Shown here: piece by piece, positions 15,360 to 52,988 of the stretch
How the letters are laid out: the number at the start of each line of letters is the position of its first letter
Numbering within the stretch: position 1 is the stretch's first letter
Assembly: GCF_030028105.1 (NCBI RefSeq)
Contig: NC_092374.1
Coordinates: 175,050,057-175,114,056, forward strand
Length of the DNA: 64,000 bases
Origin: Mobula birostris
Lineage: Eukaryota
Direction of reading: 5' to 3'
Position numbers and translations under genes: made by a program
Notes under the pieces: model-generated
Database searches by the model: none
What the model was told of the DNA's origin: nothing
What the model saw: the letters and a program-made list of their open reading frames with translations, nothing else

Positions 15360-16960
15360 ATAAAAATATACTTTATTCAGAATAAAAATATTTACAAGCA
15401 TAAACTTTGCAACACCTTTTTACTTACTAGTAGACAATCCTCAATTATATTTTTTTAAAGCCAATAGCAACATTGTCACTCATGTGGTCCTCTGGGGTGG
15501 TACGCTAGTTTTTTTAAACAGAATAAACTTTATTCTTAATAAATTATTTACAAGGATAAACAGTTGAATGCGTTTTCATTCTTTACGTCCATAGACAATG
15601 CTTTCTGTTCTGTTCCAATGCATTCATTGCTCCCTGGGGTGGTACACTGCTACAGTAATAATGGAGGGGCTTCCTCCTCCAACCCAGCCCTTCCCTCTCC
15701 AGCACAAGAAGAATCTTACACTGTGGTCCTTCCCCACCCAGCCCTTACAGTGGCTGCACCAAGCATCAGTGTGTCCCTCAGCAAGTACGTACTCCTGCAG
15801 CCTGGACTAGGTCAGATAGCAGCGTTCTTCCATGGAAATCTCGACGTGCTGGCAGATCAACAAGGTTCAGGCTGACCAAAGAGCGTCTTTCACTGAGTTA
15901 ATGATCTGCGAACAACATAGATGTCCCGTGTGTGTGTGTCCGTCCGTCCTTGGGAACAGCCTGTACGTCAGAGAGTCCTCTGCGACACTTGGGTTGAACT
16001 ACTGTGACACAGGCCCTCGCATCTTTCTTCACACCCTCTTTGCAAACCTCACCACCATCGTCCCTCGGGCAGCGCGCAGTAGGAACGACGAACCGGACAA
16101 GCAGGAGGGAACAGTCTGGGAGGACCCCTCTCACTGCATGCCAGGCAAGTTCACGCTATCTGCCGGTGGGATCTGGCAGTGAGCCAGATGGTCCAGACTG
16201 TCTGCTCGGGAAACCACCCCGCCGTGTCCATGGAGCCCTGTCCCGGCAGCGTTTTCAGGAAGCTCTGTGCTGACCCATGCTGATGGCCTTGTAGTCAAAG
16301 GTGACGGGCTGGAGTAATTCAGTATCAGAGTCACCAGCATTTGTCGTGAAATTTGTTAACTTTGCGGCAGCAGTACAATGCAATACATGATAATATCGGG
16401 GAAAAAAAACAAAATCCCAGTAAATTTATATTTTATATATAAAAATAGTTAAATTAAGTAAGTAATGCAAAAACAGAAATTTAAAAAAGTACTGAGCTAA
16501 TAAGGACAACTAGGCCGGCAACATCTTCGCAACACAGGGGACAGGTAGATCCTCGGCACGTAGTGGAACTTGATGCCCACTTCCTCAGTTCCACACACAG
16601 CCTGATGTAACCATTCATGAAGGGGGTCATCAGGGTGAGGGTGCCATTGGTATATTTTTGTCCGCAGTGTCCATGGGCTTGTGCACTGACCTGTCTCACT
16701 TCCTCCATCTTGGATCTCCTGAAAACATCTCAAGTGATTTCCAAGCTGGAGGAGCAAGGGATAGGCCATACCTGCGCCAAGAACATCAGCTCTGAGAGCA
16801 CCTCACACCTGATGACCAGGGTCTTCCCAGTTATTGATAGAGAGCATCTTCCCTGCAGACCCAATTTCTGCTTCACCTTCCCAGTCACTCCAGCCAATTC
16901 TTTGCCCAACTCAGCCCCTCCAAACCAGATCCCCAGCACCCTCAGCACCGGACCGTGAAG
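15360..16960 (-). mobile_element. Tx1-clade LINE fragments (ORF2 C-terminus and 3' UTR), with a second 3' tail and an intervening insertion
   Basis: Peptide KVKQKLGLQGRCSLSITGKTLVIRCEVLSELMFLAQVWP matches 44200-44330. The aataaagt 3' tails appear reversed at about 15375 and 15530. Confidence 0.8.
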
Positions 16961-24125: not shown

Positions 24126-24138
24126 TCTAGCTTTCAAC
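24126..24138 (-). terminator. snRNA 3' box of U1 copy A
   Basis: GTTGAAAGCTAGA lies 8 nt after the U1 3' end and resembles the vertebrate 3' box GTTTN0-4AAARNNAGA. Confidence 0.65.
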
Positions 24139-24145
24139 CGAAGGT

Positions 24146-24309
24146 CAGGGGAGAGCGCGAACGCAGTCCCCCACTACCACAAATTTTGCAGTCGAGTATC
24201 CCGCATTTGGGGACATCGCAGGCATCAGCACACCCGCAGTGCAATGGGATAGCCTCATCCTGGAACCTCAGCCTTACTGATCACCGACAGTTCCCTGCCA
24301 GGTAAGTAT
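24146..24309 (-). ncRNA. RNU1: U1 snRNA, divergent copy A
   Basis: 164 nt: 5' ATACTTACCTG, SL1 loop GATCAGTAAG, U1A loop ATTGCACTGC, Sm site AATTTGTGG, SL4 GGGGACTGCGTTCGCGCTCTCCCCTG. Confidence 0.96.
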
Positions 24310-24660
24310 GATCTCTTAGCCACCTCACCCCCGGCCAATCATGCTCATCACTCCTTACCATCCTCACGACCAGCAATTTCAAACATTTTCTTTCATTCCC
24401 TCAACACAACCAGCAGCCTACACACGCATGTATCTCCTCGAGTTAATATTCGTCTCTTGTAAATTACTGCAGCTTTTAGACATTTCGCACCCGCTTCTTC
24501 TTTGCATATTTTCCATAAAAGGAAATAGCCTCTCTGACGACCCAGCTGCAATTTTAACACTGACCACGAGGTGTCACACCACCCCGCGGTTTTATTCAGC
24601 GGCTGCGGTACGTGTGAGTGGTGTCCGCGGCTCCTGTGCGCTCAGCCTCGCTGCCCGGCC
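24310..24660 (-). promoter_or_regulatory. snRNA-type promoter of U1 copy A
   Basis: PSE-like GGTCGTGAGGATGGTAAGGAG at -62..-42, octamer-like ATGCAAAG at 24507-24500, and CTCF-like GACACCTCGTGGTCA starting at 24575. Homologous to 42015-42364. Confidence 0.75.
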
Positions 24661-25794
24661 GCGTTCTGCTCGCCCAGACCGCCAGGTTCGTACTGCGAAC
24701 TCGCAGTCACGGCTGGGGCACCCTGGAGAAAAGCCGGGGTCTTGGAGTTTCTCCGTGTATTGAAGATTCAATGAGTTGCTGTTCTGGTCACCGGAAAGAA
24801 TGAATTCAGAGTCCCCACCGGGAAGTGAACATAATGTCGCAAAATTGTTGTGACCATCTAAAGCTGGGGGTTGAACCCGGTTAAGCATCGGGGCAGGCTT
24901 TGACTGCAGTGCCAGAGAAAACCAGATGGAAAACTATGATCTGGAACGGGTAATGGTGAACATTTGCCATGGCTTTGAGTCGTACACCTGATCAGGGAAG
25001 AGGCCGTGCTGCAGGATCGGTGCTGCGCTCCCAGCTCCTCGCAGTGGGAATCGATGTGATCCAAGCAGTCAGTGAGGGTACAAAGAGCTAAATATGGTCG
25101 CTGTGTTGTTCGTAATCAAGATAAACTCAGCTGCCGGGAAACGTTTCTTACAGGTGACGGCTGGGGTCAGCATCGCAGCAATATCACGGACTGAAATCCA
25201 ATCGAAAGACGTACCCAGCAGGTCCCTACCGCATCTCGGTCTCATCGCGCATGAAGTGCCACTAGTCTTCCACTGTTTGCTCAGTAACGTGTGCACCTTG
25301 TTATTTCTTAGTTCATTTATCGTAATATCACTTTATGTGTTGTGTGTGAGTTATCTGTACTGGTTGTGCACTTGAAAAAAAAAAATCTGCAGATGCTGGA
25401 AATCGGAGCAACACACACAAGATGCTGGAGGAACTCAGCAGGCCAGGCAGTATCTATGGAAAAGAGTACAGTCGGCGTTTCGGGCCCAGACCCTGCCGTC
25501 CTAGTCTGGGGCTGGAGTGCGGAGAGTGGGTGGGACAGGATCTGTGGGTGGGAGATCCCCTCCCGCTTTCCACCATTGTCTCAGATTTAGACTCTACTGC
25601 CTTGGGAAATTTGCCACCATCCACTACGCCCTGGTGATTTTATAAACAAGGTTATCACTCAGTCTCATTTGCTCTGGGGAAAAACAATCTCAGATCATCC
25701 GATCACCCCTAATAAATGAAACCACCATTCTCGGGAAATAAATCTTATCTGCACCTTTCCTGGTTTAACTCCTGGATGACCGGATGTGTACACA

Positions 25795-26527: not shown

Positions 26528-26760
26528 ACACATTAAACCAAAACTGGCCTCACCCACATCTTGTTCAACTGTAACATGACATCCCAACTCCAGCCGTCAA
26601 TATCCTGACCGAAGGCCATTGCTCTCCCCACCTGTGTCATCATTGTCAGAGAACTGTGCACAATACCACTCAGTTTCTCCATCGTACAGGAATCTCTATG
26701 GCCCTCCAATTCAGTGAACGCTCCCCTCTGTACATCCGCCACCTCCCACACCTAATTCTC

Positions 26761-28343
26761 CAGCATCCTCACAGACATCCATCACTCCCACACTCCAAAC
26801 TGTCCAGCATCCTCACACCGGGATGGACATCCATCACTCCCACACTCCAAACTGTCCAGCATCCTCACTCCGGGATGGACATCCATCACTCCCACACTCC
26901 AAACTGTCCAGCATCCTCACACCGGGATGGACATCCATCACTCCCACACTCCAAACTGTCCAGAATCCTCACTCCGGGATGGACATCCATCACTCCCACA
27001 CTCCAAACTGTCCAGAATCCTCACTCCGGGATGGACATCCATCACTCCCACACTCCAAACTGTCCAGAATCCTCACTCCGGGATGGACATCCATCATTCC
27101 CAGACTCCAAACTGTCCAGAATCCTCACTCCGGGATGGACATCCATCACTCCCACACTCCAAACTGACCAGAATCCTCACTCCGGGATGGACATCCATCA
27201 TTCCCAGACTCCAAACTGACCAGAATCCTCACTCTGGGATGGACATCCATCACTCCCACACTCCAAACTGACCAGAATCCTCACTCCGGGATGGACATCC
27301 ATCACTTCCACACTCCAAACTGTCCAGCATCCTCACACCGGGATGGACATCCATCACTCCCACACTCCAAACTGTCCAGAATCCTCACTCCGGGATGGAC
27401 ATCCATCACTCCCACACTCCAAACTGTCCAGAATCCTCACTCCGGGATGGACATCCATCACTCCCAGACTCCAAACTGTCCAGAATCCTCACTCCGGGAT
27501 GGACATCCATCATTCCCACACTCCAAACTGACCAGAATCCTCACTCCGGGATGGACATCCATCATTCCCAGACTCCAAACTGTCCAGAATCCTCACTCCG
27601 GGATGGACATCCATCACTCCCACACTCCAAACTGTCCAGAATCCTCACTCCGGGATGGACATCCATCACTCCCACACTCCAAACTGTCCAGAATCCTCAC
27701 TCCGGGATGGACATCCATCATTCCCAGACTCCAAACTGTCCAGCATCCTCACTCCGGGATGGACATCCATCACTCCCACACTCCAAACTGACCAGAATCC
27801 TCACTCCGGGATGGACATCCATCATTCCCACACTCCAAACTGTCCAGAATCCTCACTCCGGGATGGACATCCATCACTCCCACACTCCAAACTGTCCAGA
27901 ATCCTCACTCTGGGATGGACATCCATCACTCCCACACTCCAAACTGTCCAGAATCCTCACTCCGGGATGGACATCCATCACTCCCACACTCCAAACTGAC
28001 CAGAATCCTCACTCCGGGATGGACATCCATCATTCCCAGACTCCAAACTGTCCAGAATCCTCACTCTGGGATGGACATCCATCACTCCCACACTCCAAAC
28101 TGACCAGAATCCTCACTCCGGGATGGACATCCATCACTCCCACACTCCAAACTGTCCAGAATCCTCACTCCGGGATGGACATCCATCACTCCCACACTCC
28201 AAACTGACCAGAATCCTCACTCCGGGATGGACATCCATCATTCCCAGACTCCAAACTGTCCAGAATCCTCACTCTGGGATGGACATCCATCACTCCCACA
28301 CTCCAAACTGACCAGAATCCTCACTCCGGGATGGACATCCATC
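26761..28343. repeat. 52-bp minisatellite, about 30 copies
   Basis: Unit cctcactccgggatggacatccatcactcccacactccaaactgtccagaat, embedded in the 3' part of a Rex-type LINE. Confidence 0.97.
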
Positions 28344-28527
28344 TCTGCCATCAGATTTCTGAACGGACAGCGAACCCAGATACACTACCTCACTACTTCT
28401 GTTCCAACAAGAGTGAATCTGCAGATGCTGGAAAGCCCAGCAACACACACAAAATGCTGGAGGAACTCAGCAGGCCAGGCAGCATCTGTGGAAAAGAGTG
28501 GACAGTCGGTTTTTCGTCTGTATATAA

Positions 28528-31990: not shown

Positions 31991-32979
31991 CATCAGATTT
32001 CACAGTTCAAAGTAAATTTACTGAAGTACGTATATGTCAGCATATGCAACCCTCAGAATCATTTGCGGACATTTGCAGTAATAAGACCATAAGACACAGG
32101 AGCAGAATTAGGACATCTCACCCGTCGAGTCTGATCCACCATTCAATCATGACTGATCCCGTTCTTTCCTCAACCCCAGTTCCCGGCCTTCTCCCTGTAA
32201 CCTTTGAAGCCGTGTCCAATCAAGAACCCATCAATTTCCGCTTTAAAGACACCCAAGGACCTGGCCTCTTCCCGGTAATTACAAGCAGGAAAATGGCATC
32301 AGTGAAATGCCAGTCGCAATTGGAGAGACAAGCAAGCAACGTGCAAACGACAACGTACTGTCCAAATACAAAATGAGAAAAAAGAACAAAGTTACAGTAG
32401 TAAATAATCATAAATATCGATAAAATGAGTTGTGGGGTCCCTTAAAGTGAGTCCATTGATTGTGGGAGCAGTTCAGTGATAAGATGAGTGAAAGTATTCC
32501 CACTGGTTCAAGAGCTTGATGGTTGAGGGGCAATAACTGTTCCTGAATCTGGTGGTGTGGGTCCTAAGGCTCCTGTACATTCTTCCTGATAGCAGCACGA
32601 GAGGACGGCATGACTGGGTGGAGGCCTCGATGACGGACTTTGTGTAGATGTGCTCAGTGACCGAGAGGGCTTTACCCGTAATAGACCGGTCTGTAACCAC
32701 CACTTTCTGTAGACCTTTCCATTCAAGGGCATTGTCCCTTTAGAACAGAGATGAGGAGGAATTTCTTTAGACAGAGAGTGATTCTGCGGAACTCAATACC
32801 ACAGACAGCTGTGGAGGCCAAGTCATTTAAAGTGTAAGGGTGTCAAAGGTTATGGAGCAAAGGCAGGAGAGAGGGGTTGAGAAGGATAATAAATCAGCCA
32901 CAATGGAAAGGCAGCGCAGAGTCGATGGGCTGAATGGCCTAATTCTGCTCCAATGGCTTATGGTCGTTAAACGGCGAAC

Positions 32980-33320
32980 AGAACGAGGCTGGGTTGAGGG
33001 CGGATAAGATCTCCGACCGGATCCCAGTCACATGCTTAAAGAAAACCCGGGGCGCCCTGACGCCTAGTGGGCAGCATCAGAAGTGCAGGTAGCATCGTCG
33101 GAGAGCTGCATCCTATTAGGGGAAGATATGCAAATACAAGTAAATTTCGACTCGTTAAAAGACAGTCGTCAGTCACAAGAAAGGAAAGTTAAAGCTTTCA
33201 GGAATATTTGTGTTTAAACTAGTTCCAGTAAGAAGAATCCATGGACGTTTTGCAACTACAGCTCCTGTTGATATTAAGGTGTGATGCATTCGATTGGAAG
33301 AGAGAGCTGTCAAGGTTCCG
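32980..33320 (+). promoter_or_regulatory. Orphan snRNA-type promoter cassette, paralogous to the U1 promoters, with no U1 downstream
   Basis: GACGCCTAGTGGGCA at 33059, perfect octamer ATGCAAAT at 33128-33135, PSE-like GCTCCTGTTGATATTAAGGTG at 33261-33281 and GATTGG at about 33292. Order and spacing match the U1 upstream regions. Confidence 0.65.
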
Positions 33321-33332
33321 AGAAAGGAGAGT

Positions 33333-33722
33333 GGGAAGATCCGGCGGTGCTGATGTTTCTCGGCGGACCAGGCGTTCTTAACGTGACAGTGGACGGGGAC
33401 GGCTTCGCGCTGTGTTGTGGAGGAACTTGGGTTTTGATGCGATTCCCAGTTCTCCGGCGTTGCTATTAGAGAGCGGCTCTACCTACTGTTCTTATTAGGG
33501 CAGAGTGAACGAATATGGCGGGGAAGATCTGGTGCGGATGCGGTTCCCAGCGCTCAGGCGTTCTTGTTAGAGCGCGGCTATACCAACTGTTCTTATTAGG
33601 GCAGAGAGAACGATGATGGCGAGGAAAGTCTGGTGCTGATGCGATTCCCAGCGCTCAGGCGTTCTTGTTAGAGCGCGGCTATACCAACTGTCCTTACTAG
33701 GGCAGAGAAAACGAAGGCAGGG
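33333..33722 (+). repeat. 101-bp tandem repeat, three good copies plus one diverged 5' copy
   Basis: Anchor c(a/c)ggcgtt at 33369, 33454, 33555 and 33656. The unit includes gtgctgatgcgattcccagcgctcaggcgttcttgttagagcgcggctataccaactgttcttattagggcagag. Confidence 0.85.
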
Positions 33723-33884
33723 AACACGATCTCCAGCTGATGCAGGCGTGGATCCTGGACTTCCTCCACCAACGGCAATGGAAAAGAAGATGGCGAGGCA
33801 GAGCCGTGATCGGTGAAGAAGGCTGGGGAGATCAGCGCTTCGACTTGTGGGGCTGGAAATCAAGAACGCCGTCAGATTGTGTCC

Positions 33885-34790
33885 GTGGTTAGAAGGCGGC
33901 ACCCTGGGCAACGGGGGGAAAATGTCTCCAATGTCGCTCTCACCCTGAGGGTCGGCTTCATATGTGCCTGCATCAGGTTGTGTGTGGATCCCGAATTCCC
34001 CCCCCCCAATAAAATATACTTTATTCAGAAGGATTCGAAGTAAAATTCTTTGCAAAAACCATTAGTTGATTCCTTGTCTGTTTGTGACCTCCGATTAGTT
34101 AGCGCAAACGGTGCATTACAGCGGCATTTTTTTTTAGGGCTAAATCGGCTTAAAATGCGCTAATTTACAGAACGCCAGCAGCTGCGTTGCCGAGGACTGT
34201 TCCCGGGGACGCACACGGAGACCAACATCCGGTGCTGCTGGCAGATCATCAATTCGGTGAAAGACGCGCTTTGGTCGGCCCGAAACTTGGTGGTCTGCCA
34301 GCACACGGAGATGTCCGTGACTGAATGCTGCCGACTGGCTCACTCTCGCCTGCAGGAGTACGTGCTGAGGGATGCACTCAAGCTTGGTGCGGCCACTGCG
34401 AAGGCCCGTTGGGGAAGGACCACAGTTCATCACCCGTGGGAGTGGGGGGGGGGTCGGGTGGGGAGGAGACCTACCCTCATCAGCGGTGTGGACAGATAAT
34501 CAACATGGTGCCCCAGGATTGGGTGGAATTGTTAATTTGTTAAAAGAATTAGGGCCAACGCCTGCCTTTATTGTTGATAATTTTATTGTAAAGTCTTAAC
34601 TCTTGACCAAGGGTTGAGAGTAAACGAACGATTTATTGTAAACATCTTTTATTTGTATATGAACAGAGTCAACGCATAAGTTGATTGTAAATAACTTTAT
34701 TGAATAAGGACTCAGGGTCAACGAATGTTCTTTTATATGTATATAACTTTATTTTGTAATACTTCTGGATAAAGTATTTTTGGAGAAAAA
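33885..34790. mobile_element. Cluster of Tx1 ORF2 C-terminal/3' UTR fragments on both strands
   Basis: NVALTLRVGFICACIRLCVDP (+, about 33930), KDALWSARNLVVCQHTEMSVTECCRLAHSRLQEYVLRDALKLG (+, 34257), an overlapping minus-strand tail at 34010-34300, and polyA at about 34780. Confidence 0.8.
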
Positions 34791-35439
34791 AATATTTAAA
34801 AAATTACAGAATACAGGCAAAGTTCAGGGTTATATATTAGTATAAATTGCTCATTCGCCAAAATCAACCTTTACTCGAGAGCCGATCCGCCATCATGGAA
34901 ATCGGTACGCGACACCACGACCCACGAGCGCGGCCAGCCTCAGCGACAGCAAGCGGAGCAAAAGGGCAGGGCAGCTCTGTTTTGACTCTTTCAAAGGGTG
35001 CCCCACGGGTCACCTCGTTGTCTAGTTCAAAATAAAGATGTTGCAATAAATTATCCCGTGATTCTCAAACCCTAATCAGGAATAAAACCTATTTACAATA
35101 CAACCAGGCGTTGACTTGCTTTCCTTTACCGTCTATACCTTTCCAGCCACTCCTGTGGCACTATGTTGATTCATCTATGCACACCGCTGATGAGCGGTGT
35201 ACTCCTCACCGCCCGACCCCTCCCACTCCCGCGGGTGACGAACCCTAAACTGGCCCTTCCCCAACGGCCTTGGTACACAATATGCTGGTGGAAGGCAGCA
35301 GGCCGGGCGGCATCTATGGGAAGAGTCGACGTTTCGGGCCGAGACCCTTCATAATGGATTGCTGTGGGTCAAGGCGGAGGATTTCGCCGGTTACAATGAC
35401 GTCACATGCCGCAGGCCGGCAGAAATTACAATATTTACG

Positions 35440-36990
35440 CGAGGCGCCGCTGTCGCACAGCCCCTCTTCGCCGACGCAACGCAGCAAGAAGGAACGGTAA
35501 CGGTACAAATGTTTAACCCCTACATACCAGTCGTTCACGTCCTCACATTCCTGGCGCTGTATGTGGGCAAATGTGTGGATGTCAACGACAATCCAGGAAT
35601 ATGGAGCAGCAAAAGGCAGGTCAGGGTGAAGCTGAGGGTGGATGCCAGCGGCTGTCATCCACCCAGCCTCAGTCCTCGCAATCGGAGGCAACCAGGGCTT
35701 CCTGGTTTATGCCGGGCAATCCAAGGTGTGACGCAACTGCGGCAAGGCGGGGCACATCGCATCCCAGCGCAAGGCTGTGGTGTGTAGGAAGCTCGCCAAG
35801 GACTGTACGCAGGCCAGGTCCTGCAACCTCTGCGGGCAGGCGGGCCACCTGTACAGGGCCTGTCCGAAACGTGCGGGATCCTACGTACAGCTGTCCAGGG
35901 GAGGTGATGCCATCGAAGAGGCTCCGGCTGGTTTGGAGGTTCCCGTCACCTCTGAAGAGGCGCCTCCAGAAACAACGGAGGAAGACGCATCCACCCTGAG
36001 CCCCCCCCCCTTGCAGAACACCCGGGACCCACTGCTTGACGAGGAGGGGTCATGGGGTGGGGGGAGAACTGAGGGGGGAAGAAAGAGCATGGAACGTGGT
36101 TGCCAACCGCAAAATGGCCTAGAAGGCTCCGCCAAAAAGGCAGTCGACGGAGAAAGGGCAGTGGAATCTAAAGCATCCTTTGGTCACCTGTCGAACTCGG
36201 AGGAGGAAGGCGGTAGGCGGCAGAGGAAGAGGTGGGCAAGAGTCGAGAGAACGGTGAAAGTCTGCCTGCCACTCCCCAAATACAGGAGATGGAGATCAGC
36301 AGAGCCCCTCAGCTCCGCTCCGGGAAACCGGGAGCAGTAGCGCATCTGGCGGCCCGCAGCCAGAAGGAGAGGCAGCCCCGGGAGACCCTCCACGTTCAGA
36401 GCCGGCGCTGCCTCCCCACAGTACCTGAACCCACAGCAGGTGGAAAGACTTCACCAAGGCCGTGGGCATGAGGACTCAGGACTGCGAGGGGGAGGACGAG
36501 GGTCTGTAAAGGATGACGACCTTAAGCTAACATCCTTAAACGTTCTCATTTGCGTCAGTACTTGAACACTGAATGCCGACGTGAGCTTCCTCCAACAGTG
36601 CGGCCTGCAGCACCTCCGCTACTACCGGAGGTGGTCCCAGGGTTTGTCGGTGTGGTCGGGGGACAATGATTGTCGGGCCTCCGACCTGGGGATTCTGCTG
36701 CGGGGAGGCAACTTCTCAATCACCCAAGTTAAAGAGGTGGTTGCGGGGCGCCTCCTGGTAGCAGGCGTCAAATACCGGGGCACTCCGCTCCGGCTGATCA
36801 ACGTGTACGCCTCCCCCGTGCGGAGCGAGCGGCGGGCCGACCTCGAGCGGCTCCCACAGCTGCTGGTGACCGTCCCGGCCGGTCGCTCTGGCCGGAGACT
36901 TCATTGATGCGGCTGGACGGTACCTGTAGGCTCCTGAGGGAAACGGTGAAGACAGCCAAGCTGCGCAACGCCTTTGGCACCCCAAGCCAC
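35440..36990 (+). mobile_element. Tx1-clade LINE 5' part: ORF1 (gag-like with CCHC knuckles) and the start of the ORF2 endonuclease, frameshifted
   Basis: VTVQMFNPY..GIWSSKRQVRV, CNLCGQAGHLYRACP, and EN motifs GRLLVAGV..LRLINVYASP. Confidence 0.85.
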
Positions 36991-39340: not shown

Positions 39341-40330
39341 TGAACAGAGTCAACGCAAAATTTTATTGTTAATAACTGTATTGAATAAGGACTCAGTCAA
39401 CGAATGGTTTTCTTTTCCTGTATGTAATTATTTTTATTTTGTAATATTTCTGAATAAAGTATTTTTGGAAAAAAAATCTGTTGTGCTAAGACACCTAGTG
39501 GCCGGTTTCAGAGCTGCAGGTGGCGGGTCAGAGACTGTTTCTTTTTAGGGAAGATATGCAAATCAAATGATGATGAAATTTTGAAAGGCTGTGATATTTT
39601 AAAGCAAAAGTAAGATAAAGGATGATCCACATTTGTGTTTCTTAGCACCAGTTGAGCGTAAAACGTTGGAGCGGCGGAGGATGAGAGGTGACCTGATAGA
39701 GGTGTGTACGATGATGAGAGGCATTGATCGTGTGGATAGTCAGAGGCTTTTGCCCAGGGCTGAAATTGCTGCCACAAGAGGACACAGGAAAGACGCTCTG
39801 TGGTCGGCCCGAAACTTGATGGTCTGCCAGCTGACAGAGATGTCCGTGACTGAATGCTGCCGACTGGCACACTCTCGTCTGCAGGAGTACGTTCTGAGGG
39901 ATGCACTCAAACTGGGTGCAGCCACCGCGAAGGCCCGGTGGGGAAGGACCACAGTTTAACGTTCATCACCCGTAGGAGGGGGAGAGGTTGGGTGGGGAGG
40001 AGACCGACCCTCATCAGCGGTGTGGACAGATAATCAACATGGTGCCCAAGGAGTGGGTGCAATTGTTAATTTGGGAAAGTATTAGAGCCATTGCCTGCCT
40101 TTATTGTTGAAAATTTTGATTGTTAATAAGTTTTAACACTTGACCAAGAGTTGAGAGTAAACGCATGATTTACTGTAAACATCTTTCATTTGTAAATGAA
40201 CAGAGTCAACGCAAAATTTTATTGTTAATAACTGTATTGAATAAGGACTCACAGTCAACGAATGGTTTTCTTTTCCTGTATGTAATTATTTTTATTGTGT
40301 AATATTTCTGAATAAAGTATTTTTGGGAAA
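39341..40330 (+). mobile_element. Two Tx1 3' ends (39341-39478 and about 39785-40330), plus a CR1 3' fragment (about 39650-39785)
   Basis: 39341-39478 duplicates 40196-40330. Peptide KDALWSARNLMVCQLTEMSVTECCRLAHSRLQEYVLRD, with polyA tails. Confidence 0.85.
39490..39640 (+). promoter_or_regulatory. Truncated snRNA enhancer cassette (distal part only)
   Basis: GACACCTAGTGGCC at 39490 and ATGCAAAT at 39556-39563. Aligns to 42106-42260, then is cut off by CR1 sequence. Confidence 0.65.
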
Positions 40331-40719
40331 AAAAAAGTAGGCTGGCGTCAGCCCAGGCTCTGGGTGTTGAGGAGTCTGATGGCTTGGGGGAAGAAACTGT
40401 TACATAGTCTGCCACATACATATTGACCAGGAACATCAAGAAGGACTGTGCCGACTGGCTGATCCCGGTCTGCAGAAGCACATCTACAGCAGAGGGACGC
40501 ATTGAAGCTTGGCGCAGCCTCCGCAAGGGCCGGTTGGGGAAGGACCCCGGTGCAGAGTTCTACTCCTATGGGAGAGGGAGGGATCGGTAGGGAGAGGGAG
40601 GCCCTCAATTATTGCATTTGATTTAAAACTAGTGCCAGGTGAGTGGGTGCAGTACTATAACAGTACGTAAAACTTTGAACATGCATGTAAAATGGAAAAG
40701 CATTGTAAGCTTGTAGGCA

Positions 40720-41210: not shown

Positions 41211-42014
41211 CTCAAAAAACAACTCGGCCCTCTCACGCAAAACAACAGCAGAAACATCGACCCTCCCCCCCCCGCCACTTGCACCACCAAAAGCAACGAC
41301 CCCCTCCCCCCACGATGCAATCAATAGCAAAGCCCCCAAAGAGACCTTGAGTCCGTGAAAAACTACAGTCGGTCGCAGTATTTTGGTGTCAGACAAGCTC
41401 TCTCGTACTTGAGGGAGAGCGAGGTCGTTCCTGCAACAACCAAGAGCGGGAGACCAGCAGCTCACTGTTTCAATGTTACAACCTTCCGTGTGGCTGATCC
41501 CGGTCAATCGCCCACTCCCACCCACAGATCCTCTAGAAGTGATTCTCCTCACTTCACCCCGGGACCTGATGCAGACCAGGCCCAGGACCGCGTGGAGCTC
41601 CGATCACATCCTCCTCTGCAGTCACTCACTGCTCTGCCTTCAGGAAGGCGCTTCCTACACCACTCCCACCCGCTTCAGGGTCTGAGGGTCTGATCCGTCC
41701 CTCCGGGCACCGATCTCGTACATCTGCTTCCTATCACGGTCCTTATTCAGATTTACCTTTCCAGCTTTAGACGGAACGGAGTCTAAGCGGGGTACAGTAA
41801 ATATAATTCAGTAATGTTATGGTCACTGATCTTCAATTCCTCAATCCTGAAATCAACCCTTCCCACTGACACAATAGCATATGCAAATGATCCGTTCCCT
41901 CATTGAATCCTCAATACTCCGACATACTTTAGCCCCCGGCTTTGCCCCAGCTGTCCTCCAGGAGCACCAACTAAGACTGCGTGCACATAGTGACAGCCCA
42001 AAATCCCTTGTTGA

Positions 42015-42364
42015 AGGGGACGAGGCCGAGACTGGACTGGAGCCGCGGACCTTCACCAGTCTCACGCCTGCAGCTGATGAATGAACCGCCGCGGCCGGAT
42101 ATTGTGACACCTAGTGGCCAGCCAGAGAACTGCAGGCGGGTGTCAGGCCCTTTCCTTTTTTGGTAAATATGCAAAGAAGTAACGGATGCGAAATGTTTGG
42201 AAGCTGTAGTAATTTACAAGATGCAAATTATAATCCATGCAGTACATTTGTGTGTGTGGGCTATTTCCGTTGAGGAACTGCAATGTAAGGTTTGAAATTC
42301 TAGGTCGTGTGGATGTTAAGGAGTATTGTGCATGATTGGCAGGGGGTGAGGTGGCTAAGAGATC
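42015..42364 (+). promoter_or_regulatory. snRNA-type promoter of U1 copy B
   Basis: CTCF-like GACACCTAGTGGCCA at 42106, ATGCAAAG at 42169, perfect ATGCAAAT at 42221-42228, and PSE-like GGTCGTGTGGATGTTAAGGAG at 42303-42323 (-62..-42). Confidence 0.8.
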
Positions 42365-42528
42365 ATACTTACCTGGCAGGGAACTATCGGTGATCAGTAA
42401 GGCCGAGGTTCCAGGACGAGGCTATCCCATTGCAGTGCGGGTGTGCTGACGCCTGCGATGTCCCCAAATGCGGGATACTCGACTGCAAAATTTGTGGTAG
42501 TGGGGGACTGCGTTCGCGCTCTCCCCTG
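42365..42528 (+). ncRNA. RNU1: U1 snRNA, divergent copy B
   Basis: 164 nt with the same architecture as copy A and 5 differences from it. The U1A loop reads ATTGCAGTGC. Confidence 0.96.
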
Positions 42529-43214: not shown

Positions 43215-46200
43215 AAAGAATAAAGAATGGCTCAATCCGTTCCTTCGATGCGTTTAAAAATCCCGGACGCGACAGCTCACCGGCTGAGTTGTACTCGGCT
43301 CTGTGGAACTGGATGGGCCCAGACCTGCTGGAAGTGTACAACGCTATGCTTCTGGCCGGCAGTATGTCTGAGTCCATGAGGAAGGGCATCATCACCCTCA
43401 TCTACAAGCAGAAGGGGGAAAGGGAGGACATTAGGAATTGGAGACCCATCTCTCTCCTGAATGTGGACTACAAGATCCTGTCCAAGGCTATCGCCGACAG
43501 GGTCAGGTCTGCTCTGGGACAGGTGATCCACCCGGACCAAACCTGTGCTGTACCGGGCAGGAAGATCTCAGACAGCCTCGCGCTGCTGAGGGACACCATC
43601 GCCTACGTGCAGGACAGGGGGGTGGACGCCTGCCTGGTCAGCTTGGACCAGGAGAAAGCCTTCGACAGGATATAGCACACGTACATGGCGGACGTGCTCT
43701 CCAAAATGGGATTTGGGGAGAGAGTCCGGAATTGGATCAGACTGCTCTACACAGACATCCGTAGTGCAGTCCAGGTCAACGGGTGGGAAACAGACAGCTT
43801 CCCCATCAGGTCTGGAGTCAGGTAGGGCTGTCCCCTCTCCCCTGTCTTGTTTGTCTGCTGTATAGAGCCCTTTGCCGAGGCCATCAGGAGGGATGACGAT
43901 AAGAGATAAGACGGGTGACGCTGCCAGGCAGTGGAGGGACCCAAGTGAAAACCTCCCTGTACATGGACGACGTCACCGTCTTCTGCTCTAATCCGAGGTC
44001 AGTTCGCAGGTTGATTGGCATCTGCGAACAGTTCGAGCTAGCGACGGGGGCCAGGCTCAACCGCACGAAGAGTGAAGCCATGCTCTTCGGCAACTGGCCA
44101 GACCGTTCCAGCGTCCCCTTCACCATCAGGTCTGACCACATGAAGGTGTTGGGGATCTGGTTCGGAGGGGCCGAGGCGTGCAACAAGAACTGGCGGGAGC
44201 GGACTGCCAAGGTGAAACAGAAACTGGGACTGTGGGGAGGGCGCTCCCTGTCGATAACGGGCAAGAACCTGGTCATCAGGTGTGAGGTGCTCTCAGGGCT
44301 GCTGTACCTGGCGCAGGTCTGGCCCGTCCCCCGCTCCTACAGCTCGGAAATCACCCGGGCTGTCTTCGGATTCGTCTCGGGATCCAAGATGGAGCGGGTG
44401 AGACGGACCGCCATGCACAAGTCCCTAGACAATGGGGGCAAGAACGTCCCCAATGTCGCCCTCACCCTGATGGCCAGCTTCGTGTGTGGCTATGCTTTTA
44501 GCTGCCAGCCCGAAGGACTCTCCCACGAGGAAAGGCACCATTACCCCTCATCTACAGACAGAAAGGGGAAAGGGATGACATCAATCATTGTGACCCAATT
44601 TCGTTCCTGAATGTGGACTCGAAGATCCTGTGCAGGACCATCGCCAACAGAGTCAAGCCTGTTCTGGGAAAGGTGATGCTCCTGGAACAAACCTGTGCTG
44701 TACCTGGCCGGAAAATCTTTGGCAGCCTCGCGCTGCTGGGGGACACCGTCACCTACGTGCAAGGCAGCGGGGTGGACGCCTGTCTGATCAGCTTGGGCCA
44801 GCAGAAAGCCTTCGACAGGATGTCACACACTTACACCAATAGGCTGGTCCTGGACTTATTTCCTGGCATAATTTACATATTACTATTTAACTATTTATGG
44901 TTTTATTACTATTTATTATTAATGGTGCAACTGTAACGAAAACCAATTTCCCCCGAGGTCAATAAAGTATGACTAAGACGTGATGGACGCACACTCCAAA
45001 ATGGGATCTGGGGAGGAAATCAGGAACTGGATCCAATTGCTCAACACAGACATCTGTAGCCCGGCCCAAAGCAATGGGCGGGGAATAAATAGCTTCTCCA
45101 TCAAGTATGGAGTCAGGCAGGGTTGCCCAATCCCCGTCTTGTCTGTGTGCTGTATAGAACGTTTCGCCGAGGCTGTCACGGAGGACGAGAGCGTAGGAGG
45201 GGTGACGCTGCCGATCAGTGGAAGGACTCAAGTGAAATCCTCCCTCTACATGGACCGCTTAATCATTTTCTGTTCAGATCCGGCCAGTTCCCAGATTGAT
45301 CAACATCTGCGCCCAGTATGAGTTGGCATCAGGGGCCAGGGTTAACCGCATGATCTTCGTCTAATGACCTGACCGATCCAGTGTCCCCATTCACCAGCAG
45401 CTCCGATTACCTGAAGGTGCTTGATATGGTTTTCGCAGTGGCCGAGGCGTGCAACAAGAATTGGCTGGAGTGCACTGGGCAGGTAAAACCGAAATTTGGA
45501 CTGTGGGGAGGGCGCTCTCTATCCATAACCGGGAAGAACCTATTCCTCGGGTGTGAGGTGCTCTCAGAGCTGCTGTGCTTGGCGCAGGTGTGTCCCATTC
45601 CCCAATCCTCCAGCTTGGGAAAGACACGAACTGTCTTCAGTTTCATCCAGTGATTCAAGATGGGATGGACAGGCGGGCCGCAATGCATATCCCTGGACAA
45701 TGAGGGCAAAAATTACCCGATGTTGCCCACACTTCGATGTGTGTGATGGCCTCAGGCTGTGCGTGGAACTTGAATACACGGGCACTAAGTGTCACGGCCT
45801 GCCGAGTCTCTACCAGTCACCGGTTTTGCCAAGGATGATGGTTTTGGTCCCGTTGTCGCGCAACATCCCAGTCAGCTGGACGATGATGCACTACCTGTCC
45901 TACGCTGAAATTTTCTTCCAGACCAATACACTTTGACCAGAAGGCCATCATACAATGGTCAGCACGGAACGTCCTGCCGAAACTGCAGGACAACTACATG
46001 GACACTGTAGGGCAGGGTTTTCCCGAAGAGACTGTCTGGCGGAATGACTCATCGCCAGGCCTCACCAACAGGCACCAGGACCTCGCCTGGCTGCCGATGA
46101 GAGCTCCTCACCCCCCAAATGAAATCCTTCTTGCATACCCGGCGCATCATTCCCACAACCGGCAGCCCGCGGGATGGCTAGCTCACCTCGTTGTGGACGG

Positions 46201-52914: not shown

Positions 52915-52988
52915 AGGCACCACTGAGACTTGAACTCAGGATCTCCTGTTTACTAGACAGGCGCTTTAACCAACTAAGCCATGGTGCC
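52915..52988 (-). tRNA. tRNA-Thr (AGT)
   Basis: GGCACCATGGCTTAGTTGGTTAAAGCGCCTGTCTAGTAAACAGGAGATCCTGAGTTCAAGTCTCAGTGGTGCCT. All four stems pair, A and B boxes are present, and a TTTT tract lies about 16 nt downstream. Confidence 0.93.

What the first reader, a model, noticed from the sequence alone, without database searches (positions are those of the whole stretch)
32980..33722. Orphan U1-type promoter pointing at an unexplained 101-bp repeat array: candidate novel snRNA-promoter-driven RNA
Seen: the cassette has the same ordered elements as the two U1 promoters (CTCF-like box, perfect octamer, PSE-like box, GATTGG). The CTCF-box-to-start distance is 259 nt for copy B and 266 nt for copy A, which places the start here at about 33318-33325 (aligned A at 33321). 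What follows is not U1 but a CpG-rich array of 101-bp units with no TE or protein match that I can recognise. There are short echoes of U1: GTGCTGATGCGATTCCCA in the units (U1: GTGCTGA....TGCGATTTCCCCA) and GGGGACGGCTTCGCGCT at 33395-33411 (U1 SL4: GGGGACTGCGTTCGCGCT). Inference: either a U1 gene was scrambled and amplified into a new repeat RNA, or the snRNA promoter was captured by another transcript. The echoes are short and may be chance.
Basis: partly seen in the sequence, partly recalled or inferred. Interest (0 to 1): 0.7.

Follow-up and report, generated by a model that had tools for sequence, protein, structure and literature searches.

The report
U1 promoter relic driving repeat transcript
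Between two working U1 snRNA genes of a manta ray lies an old third copy that kept its promoter but lost its U1 RNA to a wrecked stretch and a small single-copy 101-base repeat; it still looks open and weakly transcribed, so it is most likely a leaky gene relic, not a new RNA gene.

Summary
A profile built only from the two true U1 promoters (U1 at 24146-24309 minus, 42365-42528 plus) finds 32973-33302 at E=2.5e-21. Box, octamer, ACAAGA and GATTGG keep the U1 spacing, which puts +1 at about 33323. No U1 or other Rfam family follows. What follows is a half unit (33333-33380), three 101-bp units (33436-33738, 74-83% alike) and a partial last unit ending near 33760.

The array is not a dispersed TE. 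In the DNA run laid (X1, same species label), 33018-33905 has single-copy depth (about 5), against 1e3-1e6 in the flanks. A related species carries promoter and array on one contig.

The U1 "echoes" fail strict tests. A gap-tolerant collinear alignment of 33298-33445 to U1 is unusual (p about 0.003-0.03), so a wrecked U1 body is plausible but not shown.

Two signs suggest activity. CpG o/e is 0.9-1.0 across 32970-33905, against 0.46 for the window and 0.31 in a second, truncated promoter relic at 39484-39646. Three low-depth contigs from two probable RNA runs tile 33360-33879 and none covers the promoter. Strand, start and polymerase are unknown.

Nothing points to a functional RNA: no excess folding energy, no Sm site, no significant 3' box, and motif conservation no better than chance.

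Verdict: a transcribed U1-gene relic. The scan has no record of this on other DNA.

The parts
32973..33302 (+). U1-type promoter paralogue, equivalent to about -350 to -20 of the true U1 genes
   Evidence: nhmmer profile of the A and B promoters only: E=2.5e-21, 70 bits; z about 25 against shuffles; about 62% identity to A and B
33059..33074 (+).
   Evidence: The core CCTAGTGG at 33063 is present in B, the orphan and the 39.5-kb relic; A has CCTCGTGG
33126..33135 (+). Octamer (Oct-1 type) of the distal element
   Evidence: ATATGCAAA is identical in all four promoter copies. It starts at -195 here, -196 in B and -198 in A
33261..33279 (+). PSE-equivalent block (aligned to -62 to -44 of U1 A and B)
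   Evidence: Defined by position and alignment only. The human PSE consensus scores 7/12 here and only 6-7/12 in the true ray U1 genes, so it does not discriminate
33292..33297 (+). GATTGG block, at -31 to -26 in both true U1 genes
33318..33326 (+). Predicted transcription start (inferred from spacing, not observed)
   Evidence: GATTGG spacing gives 33323; the first RNA-type contig begins at 33360
33298..33445 (+). Possible wrecked, internally deleted U1 body; holds the SL4-like string at 33395-33411
   Evidence: Gap-tolerant collinear alignment to U1+flank: 3/1000 (A) and 26/1000 (B) shuffles reach it. It is the top window of about 12,000 genomic windows for A, with 0.8% at least as good for B and 0.2% for U1 alone. 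There is no Rfam or nhmmer hit
33333..33380 (+). Degenerate half unit ('unit 0') of the repeat
   Evidence: Local alignment to 33521-33566, score 20 against shuffles of 11.1 +/- 1.9; 1 of 1000 reach it
33436..33760 (+). 101-bp CpG-rich tandem array: three full units to 33738 and a partial last unit
   Evidence: TRF 33436-33716, period 101, 87% matches; unit identities 75-84/101; single-copy DNA depth
33360..33879 (.). Span tiled by contigs of two probable RNA runs; strand unknown
   Evidence: X5: 33360-33546 and 33716-33879. X14: 33581-33752. Depth 3.7-8.2, with 1-2 differences each. Nothing at 33018-33313 or 33906-34053
33761..33902 (+). Unique non-repeat tail of the island
   Evidence: Single-copy depth; no match elsewhere in the window
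33782..33790 (+). 3'-box-like core (AAAAGAAGA), probably chance
   Evidence: The core occurs 38 times in the window on both strands, so about 0.17 are expected in this 585-nt stretch. The full consensus is absent here
33903..33995 (.). Dispersed repeat fragment that ends the unique island
   Evidence: DNA depth 1000-2200; copies at 44423-44491 and 16590-16650
39484..39646 (+). Second promoter relic: box and octamer only, cut off at about -108, CpG-depleted. Serves as an internal dead control
   Evidence: A+B profile E=1e-12; CpG o/e 0.31; aligned

Best explanation
This is the relic of an old DNA-level duplicate of a U1 snRNA gene inside a small U1 cluster.

Shown: the upstream 330 bp is a paralogue of the U1 promoter, with box, octamer, PSE-equivalent block and GATTGG in the original spacing.

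Inferred: the U1 body was destroyed by deletions and rearrangement. About 145 nt of barely recognisable remnant is left. Part of it, together with adjacent sequence, was duplicated locally into a single-copy minisatellite of 101-bp units.

Inferred from CpG retention: the promoter has stayed unmethylated, so the whole 0.9-kb island keeps its CpGs.

Inferred from three low-depth RNA-type contigs: the promoter still recruits RNA polymerase II by the snRNA route (Oct-1 on the octamer, SNAPc on the PSE-equivalent block). It starts near 33323 and runs at least 0.55 kb through the remnant and the array.

Inferred: the product has no U1 5' end, no Sm site, no convincing 3' box and no stable fold. It is therefore most likely an unstable by-product, cleared like other defective snRNA-gene transcripts, and not a working RNA.
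For: Promoter homology. No U1 or other family downstream.

Single-copy status and the same arrangement in a related species (one 1151-nt contig covering 32936-33300 and 33544-34126).

Possible U1 remnant exactly where a body should lie and on the right strand. Array starts 10 nt after the predicted start, with a half unit inside the remnant.

CpG o/e is 0.91 in the promoter and about 1.0 downstream. Against the window background of 0.46 this gives P=0.008 and 9e-6. The truncated sister relic has decayed to 0.31.

RNA-type contigs lie only at 33360-33879. The X5/X1 depth ratio is 0.78 there and at most 0.12 in repeats, so X5 is not plain DNA. A third run of that study lacks the locus.

No fold signal (z -0.22 and +2.5).

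Precedents: transcribed U1 variants and pseudogenes, and seven un-annotated SNAPc/Pol II loci in human cells (PMC3561869, PMC3499247, PMC12667742).
Against: The runs are only guessed to be RNA, and the contigs are unstranded with depth 4-8. With three contigs, missing the 296-nt promoter has a chance probability of about 0.2 by my estimate.

Standard tools see no U1 in the body. The evidence for a remnant depends on permissive gap costs, and other genomic windows come close (43.0 against 43.8).

If the body had simply decayed at the promoter's rate it should be easier to recognise than the promoter, so extra rearrangement has to be assumed.

The orphan promoter is as diverged as the dead relic (55-61%), and its motif runs are not beyond chance (permutation p 0.14-0.25). 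No selection on the promoter is therefore shown.

Some nearby TEs also have high CpG o/e.
Confidence: 0.55

Rival explanations
1. The promoter relic is dead. The CpG-rich array acts as its own CpG-island promoter, or the contigs come from read-through, antisense or intronic transcription unrelated to the snRNA-type elements.
For: The orphan is as diverged as the truncated dead relic, and motif conservation is not beyond chance. Only three low-depth, unstranded contigs exist, and their absence from the promoter is weak evidence. There is no 3' box. The human PSE consensus fits poorly.
Against: The promoter part itself keeps its CpGs (o/e 0.91, P=0.008 against background), whereas the sister relic lost them. 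The most upstream contig starts 37 nt after the predicted start. The window shows no host gene, only LINE fragments.
Confidence: 0.25
2. One reading: a U1-derived snRNA-type promoter has been co-opted to make a functional, lineage-specific repeat-containing non-coding RNA.
For: There is an ordered promoter with the right spacing, an unmethylated-looking island, transcription signs in two of three probable RNA runs, the same arrangement in a second species, and human precedents of un-annotated SNAPc/Pol II loci (PMC3499247).
Against: There is no excess structure, no Sm site, no significant 3' box and only low depth. The region around the start and first units (33301-33543) did not align at 90% between the two species and differs in length, 243 against 205 nt. 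Substitution levels in the promoter (8/365) and downstream (24/583) do not differ clearly.
Confidence: 0.12
3. The 101-bp array is the 5' UTR monomer array of a transposable element that landed behind the promoter.
For: CpG-rich tandem units of about 100 bp at the 5' end of a transcript resemble LINE monomers. The surroundings are full of LINE fragments.
Against: DNA depth is about 5 across 33018-33905, against 1e3-1e6 in true repeats. There is no other copy in the window, no ORF or Pfam domain behind it, and the next TE pieces are unrelated fragments.
Confidence: 0.03

Closest known systems
Vertebrate U1 pseudogenes and variant U1 (vU1) genes made by DNA duplication, with flanks (PMC3561869, PMC5493778)
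   Same: It is a paralogous copy of a U1 unit in a U1 cluster. It retains DSE/PSE-type upstream sequence, and it may still be transcribed.
   Different: Known vU1 genes and pseudogenes keep a recognisable U1-like body and usually a 3' box. Here the body is unrecognisable to Rfam and nhmmer and is replaced by a remnant plus a 101-bp minisatellite.
Un-annotated SNAPc- and Pol II-occupied loci of human cells ('Unknown-1 to -7', PMC3499247), and computationally found snRNA gene-like units (PMC1790723)
   Same: An snRNA-type promoter architecture stands in front of sequence that is not a known snRNA.
   Different: Those were defined by factor occupancy or transcription assays. Here occupancy is untested. 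The PMC1790723 units are presented there as putative PSE/DSE-dependent units with noncoding products; I recall that they are Pol III units with a TATA box, but did not check this in the paper. No TATA box is seen at -30 here.
Defective snRNA-gene transcripts removed by quality control (PMC12667742)
   Same: It is a transcript from an snRNA-type gene copy that lacks the features needed for snRNP assembly, and it is seen only at low abundance.
   Different: Degradation has not been examined here. This transcript would be far longer (at least 0.5 kb) than a defective snRNA.
LINE 5' UTR monomer arrays (mouse L1 type; from my own knowledge)
   Same: CpG-rich tandem units at the start of a transcribed region.
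   Different: This one is single copy, has no TE body behind it, and is tied to a U1-type promoter in two species.

Membership tests
Pol II snRNA-type promoter of the U1 lineage | Sequence homology to bona fide U1 promoters of the same genome | tested here: met
   A profile from A and B only gives E=2.5e-21 over 32973-33302; z about 25
Pol II snRNA-type promoter of the U1 lineage | Distal element with an Oct-1 octamer about 200 bp upstream (consensus in PMC5493778) | tested here: met
   ATGCAAAT at 33128, 195 nt before the predicted start; the true genes have it at 196 and 198 nt
Pol II snRNA-type promoter of the U1 lineage | PSE near -55 able to bind SNAPc | tested here: inconclusive
   The block aligned to -62 to -44 is partly conserved. 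The human consensus scores 7/12 here and 6-7/12 in the true ray genes, so it cannot discriminate. Binding is not testable here
Pol II snRNA-type promoter of the U1 lineage | No TATA box at -25/-30 (this separates Pol II from Pol III type 3 promoters) | tested here: met
   Read from the sequence: -31 to -26 is GATTGG, followed by a purine-rich stretch, as in the true U1 genes
Pol II snRNA-type transcription unit | 3' box (GTTYN0-3AARRYAGA or the older GTTTN0-3AAARNNAGA) shortly after the RNA end | tested here: not met
   The full pattern is absent from the locus. The only core match, at 33782, is expected by chance about 0.17 times. U1 A does have the core at 24126-24134
Pol II snRNA-type transcription unit | Start site, SNAPc/Pol II/Integrator occupancy, non-polyadenylated capped product | not testable with these tools
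   Only unstranded contigs of probable RNA runs were available.
U1 snRNA / variant U1 (Rfam RF00003) | Covariance-model match, U1 5' end, Sm site | tested here: not met
   No U1 hit at E<=10 in 32500-34500 or at E<=1 elsewhere in the window beyond the two genes. No nhmmer hit with a U1+flank profile. By reading the sequence, no U1 5' end and no Sm-type site is seen
U1 pseudogene by DNA duplication | Flank homology plus a recognisable U1-derived body | tested here: inconclusive
   The flank criterion is met. The body is supported only by a gap-tolerant collinear alignment, p about 0.003-0.03 from shuffles and at or near the top of genomic windows
TE 5' UTR monomer array | Many dispersed genomic copies attached to a TE body | tested here: not met
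   DNA depth is about 5 over 33018-33905 against 1e3-1e6 in the flanks. There is no second copy in the window. No TE domain lies behind it
CpG island | More than 500 bp with GC at or above 0.5 and CpG o/e above 0.6 | tested here: met
   33300-33999: GC 0.53-0.57, o/e 0.77-1.11. The promoter has o/e 0.91. The window mean is 0.46

The most novel reading that the evidence does not exclude
In mobulid rays a U1-gene promoter has been taken over to make a new, SNAPc-dependent, probably non-polyadenylated RNA of about 0.45-0.55 kb. The RNA is built from a scrambled U1 remnant and 101-nt repeats, and its CpG island is kept open by selection. It would be an snRNA-type gene with a wholly new product.
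Probability: 0.12. Interest if true: 0.6.

Novelty: new variant of a known kind. Interest (0 to 1): 0.3.

Why it matters
snRNA-type promoters are thought to serve a very small, fixed set of genes. A copy that has lost its snRNA but stays open and transcribed shows how such promoters outlive their genes and can expose new sequence to transcription. That is raw material for new non-coding RNAs, and a source of defective transcripts that quality control must remove.

The window also gives a natural series: two live genes, one leaky relic and one dead, methylation-decayed relic. This series could be used to ask what keeps an snRNA promoter active. As it stands the locus is more likely a by-product than a new gene.

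Tried and rejected
- **Rfam** at gathering and at permissive thresholds found no U1 fragment or other family at the locus.
- **Strict local alignment** of U1 to the array was not significant. The 101-bp units alone score like ordinary DNA.
- **nhmmer with a U1+flank profile** found nothing in 32900-34000.
- **Flank homology beyond the promoter**: A and B share only -466 to +168, and the orphan shares nothing downstream with either.
- **A displaced U1 half**, as from a Dada-type insertion into U1 (lead from PMC8869645), was not found in the window.
- **Human PSE and STAF consensus scans** were uninformative, because even the true ray U1 promoters fit poorly.
- **3' box search**: no full match. 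The core match is not significant.
- **RNA folding** of both strands showed no excess stability.
- **ORFs across the locus** have no Pfam family, and 101 is not a multiple of 3.
- **Motif-cluster permutation test** for selection on the orphan promoter was not significant.
- **The scan's own notes** by sequence and by words held nothing on this repeat.
- **Resemblances I noticed only by reading the sequence**: a TTAGGG string in each unit, C/D-box-like strings, and a TTCCCAG string in each unit that recalls the start of a STAF/ZNF143 site. I treated all three as chance. The STAF consensus scan scored 12-13/18 in the array, no better than elsewhere. No Rfam telomerase or snoRNA match reached significance.

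Full report
**Setting.** Earlier notes of the scan say the window comes from a manta ray. I did not verify the species. Rfam finds two full U1 genes: A at 24146-24309 on the minus strand and B at 42365-42528 on the plus strand. It also finds one tRNA, which ARAGORN reads as tRNA-Thr(AGT). The finding lies midway between the two U1 genes. The rest of the window is mostly LINE debris, with endonuclease, reverse transcriptase and zinc-knuckle ORFs. I saw no host protein gene.

**The promoter is real and is a U1-promoter paralogue.**
- Local alignment of 32901-33330 to the 420 bp upstream of U1 A and B scores 48 and 45. Dinucleotide shuffles give 11 +/- 1.4, so z is about 25.
- A leave-one-out test is cleaner. 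An nhmmer profile built from the A and B upstream regions alone finds 32973-33302 at E=2.5e-21. The match covers profile positions equivalent to about -355 to -20.
- The conserved blocks keep their order and spacing: CCTAGTGG at 33063, ATGCAAAT at 33128, ACAAGA at 33175, GATTGG at 33292. The spacings are 65/47/117 nt, against 59/47/118 in B and 64/47/120 in A.
- GATTGG starts at -31 in both true genes, so the predicted start is 33323.
- A and B share homology only from -466 to +168. The duplicated U1 unit is therefore small.
- A fourth, previously unmentioned copy lies at 39484-39646 (E=1e-12). It has the box and the octamer, and repeats cut it off at about -108. No further copies exist in the window.
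- Over the shared part, A and B are 74% identical. The orphan and the fragment are 55-61% identical to A, to B and to each other. Both are therefore old.

**What follows the promoter.**
- No U1 and no other Rfam family is detectable, even at E<=10.
- TRF reports a 101-bp period at 33436-33716. The three full units are 84, 84 and 75 of 101 identical.
- A degenerate half unit at 33333-33380 matches the unit junction (1 of 1000 shuffles). By my reading of the sequence, a partial unit closes the array near 33760.
- The array therefore begins about 10 nt after the predicted start.
- The local ORFs have no Pfam family, and the unit length is not a multiple of three.

**Not a dispersed element.** I laid Logan contigs of four runs on 32500-34700.
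- In the DNA run X1, which carries the window's presumed species label (organism A), 33018-33905 has depth about 5 from three contigs that tile the locus.
- The flanks reach 1e3 to 1e6.
- At 90% likeness or better, the promoter, the array and the 140-bp tail are single copy.
- The island is bounded by high-copy repeats. One ends at about 32965. Another starts at about 33903, with copies at 44423-44491 and 16590-16650.
- In a related species (run X6), one 1151-nt contig covers 32936-33300 and 33544-34126. The promoter-plus-array arrangement is therefore orthologous.
- The 243 nt in between, which hold the start, the remnant and the first unit, correspond to 205 nt in that contig and did not align at 90%.

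**Are the U1 echoes real?**
- Under strict local alignment they are not significant. For 33298-33760, 74 of 500 shuffles reach the score. For the first 143 nt, 22 of 500 do.
- The units themselves are unremarkable against U1, and nhmmer with a U1+flank profile finds nothing.
- With soft gap costs, 33298-33445 aligns collinearly with U1 positions 13 to 187 including the 3' flank. The score is reached by 3 of 1000 shuffles against A and 26 of 1000 against B.
- I also compared every 148-nt window of the 64 kb on both strands, leaving out the true genes and a 52-bp satellite that inflates such scores. Against A this window ranks first, but narrowly (43.8 against 43.0). Against B, 0.8% of windows do as well. 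Against U1 alone, 0.2% do.
- Place and strand were fixed beforehand, so I take this as modest support for a wrecked U1 body. It is not proof.
- One point counts against simple decay. The U1 sequence of A and B has not changed, so a body decaying at the promoter's rate should be easier to recognise than the promoter. It is harder, so deletions and rearrangements must be assumed. The tandem duplication shows that this stretch has been unstable.

**Signs of activity.** There are two.

*CpG content.*
- CpG o/e is 0.91 in the orphan promoter and about 1.0 over 33321-33905. The window mean is 0.46.
- The Poisson probabilities against that background are 0.008 and 9e-6.
- The true promoters have 0.95 (A) and 0.70 (B).
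- The truncated relic at 39.5 kb has 0.31, with 2 CpGs seen against 6.4 expected at o/e = 1 (P=0.048).
- In a methylated vertebrate genome, which I assume from general knowledge, an old sequence keeps its CpGs only if it is unmethylated in the germline. Active promoters typically are.

*RNA-type contigs.*
- Two small runs of another study on the same species label are flagged as probably RNA. They give contigs at 33360-33546 and 33716-33879 (X5) and at 33581-33752 (X14).
- Their depth is 3.7-8.2, and each has 1-2 differences from the window.
- Neither run gives anything at 33018-33313 or 33906-34053.
- The X5/X1 depth ratio is 0.78 on this unique stretch, at most 0.12 on the neighbouring repeats, and 0 on a repeat whose DNA depth of about 2200 I estimate to mean roughly 440 copies. 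X5 is therefore not plain genomic DNA.
- A third run of that study, from the same sample as the best DNA holder X1 (probably the individual that was assembled), lacks the locus.
- Other agents' notes say that public RNA of this species shows spliced transcripts. That is a lead only. I could not confirm that these are the same runs.

*Limits of the RNA evidence.*
- The contigs are unstranded and of low depth.
- With three contigs, missing the 296-nt promoter would happen by chance about one time in five by my estimate.
- The start, the strand and the polymerase are not shown.

**Nothing indicates a functional RNA.**
- The predicted RNA (33323-33800) folds no better than shuffles, with z = -0.22. 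The opposite strand folds worse, z = +2.5.
- The 3' box consensus is absent. A core match at 33782 is expected by chance about 0.17 times.
- I saw no Sm-type site on reading the sequence.
- Runs of three-way identity in the orphan promoter are no longer than permutation predicts (p 0.14-0.25). The orphan is as diverged as the dead relic.
- The human PSE and STAF consensus sequences (PMC5493778) fit even the true ray U1 promoters poorly. The PSE is therefore assigned by position only.

**Best reading** (confidence 0.55). This is an old duplicate of a U1 unit. Its body was destroyed and partly amplified into a private minisatellite. Its promoter has stayed unmethylated and still fires at a low level, giving an unstable by-product.

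**Rivals.**
- The promoter is dead and the contigs have another source: 0.25.
- It is a genuinely co-opted snRNA-type gene for a new repeat RNA: 0.12.
- It is a TE monomer array: 0.03.

**Closest known cases.**
- Transcribed U1 variants and pseudogenes (PMC3561869, PMC5493778).
- The seven un-annotated SNAPc/Pol II loci of human cells (PMC3499247).
- The snRNA gene-like units of PMC1790723.
- Defective snRNA-gene transcripts cleared by quality control (PMC12667742).

The difference here is that the snRNA body is gone and a single-copy tandem repeat stands in its place. I rate it a new variant of a known kind, of modest interest.

**Housekeeping.** No N stretch is in the window.

Noticed in passing
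window 39484-39646 (+): A fourth U1-type promoter relic, 2.7 kb upstream of U1 B. It has the box and a perfect octamer. It is cut off at about -108 by repeats and is CpG-depleted (o/e 0.31). The finding does not mention it.
   Followed up: partly
window 26774-28350: A 52-bp satellite of 30 copies, 95% alike, 2.5-4 kb upstream of U1 A. It carries long spurious ORFs (26656-27219, 27395-28207).
   Followed up: no
window 52915-52988 (-): tRNA-Thr (AGT), 70 bits in Rfam, about 10 kb from U1 B. Together with the U1 genes it makes a small-RNA gene cluster.
   Followed up: no
window 34259-34792 and 39788-40334: Two 87%-identical copies of a retroposon 3' end with an AATAAA and an A-rich tail. A CCHC zinc-knuckle ORF (35777-36340) of a LINE-like element lies further downstream.
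   Followed up: partly
window 24310-24775 and 41899-42364: The two live U1 genes share only -466 to +168, with 74% identity in the promoter and near identity in the RNA. Their 3' boxes differ: A has the core AAAGCTAGA, and B has only a weaker AAAAATAGG.
   Followed up: partly
window 33688: The probable RNA run X14 reads T where the window has C and the DNA run X1 shows no T. This is most simply a polymorphism between individuals, because the samples differ.
   Followed up: no
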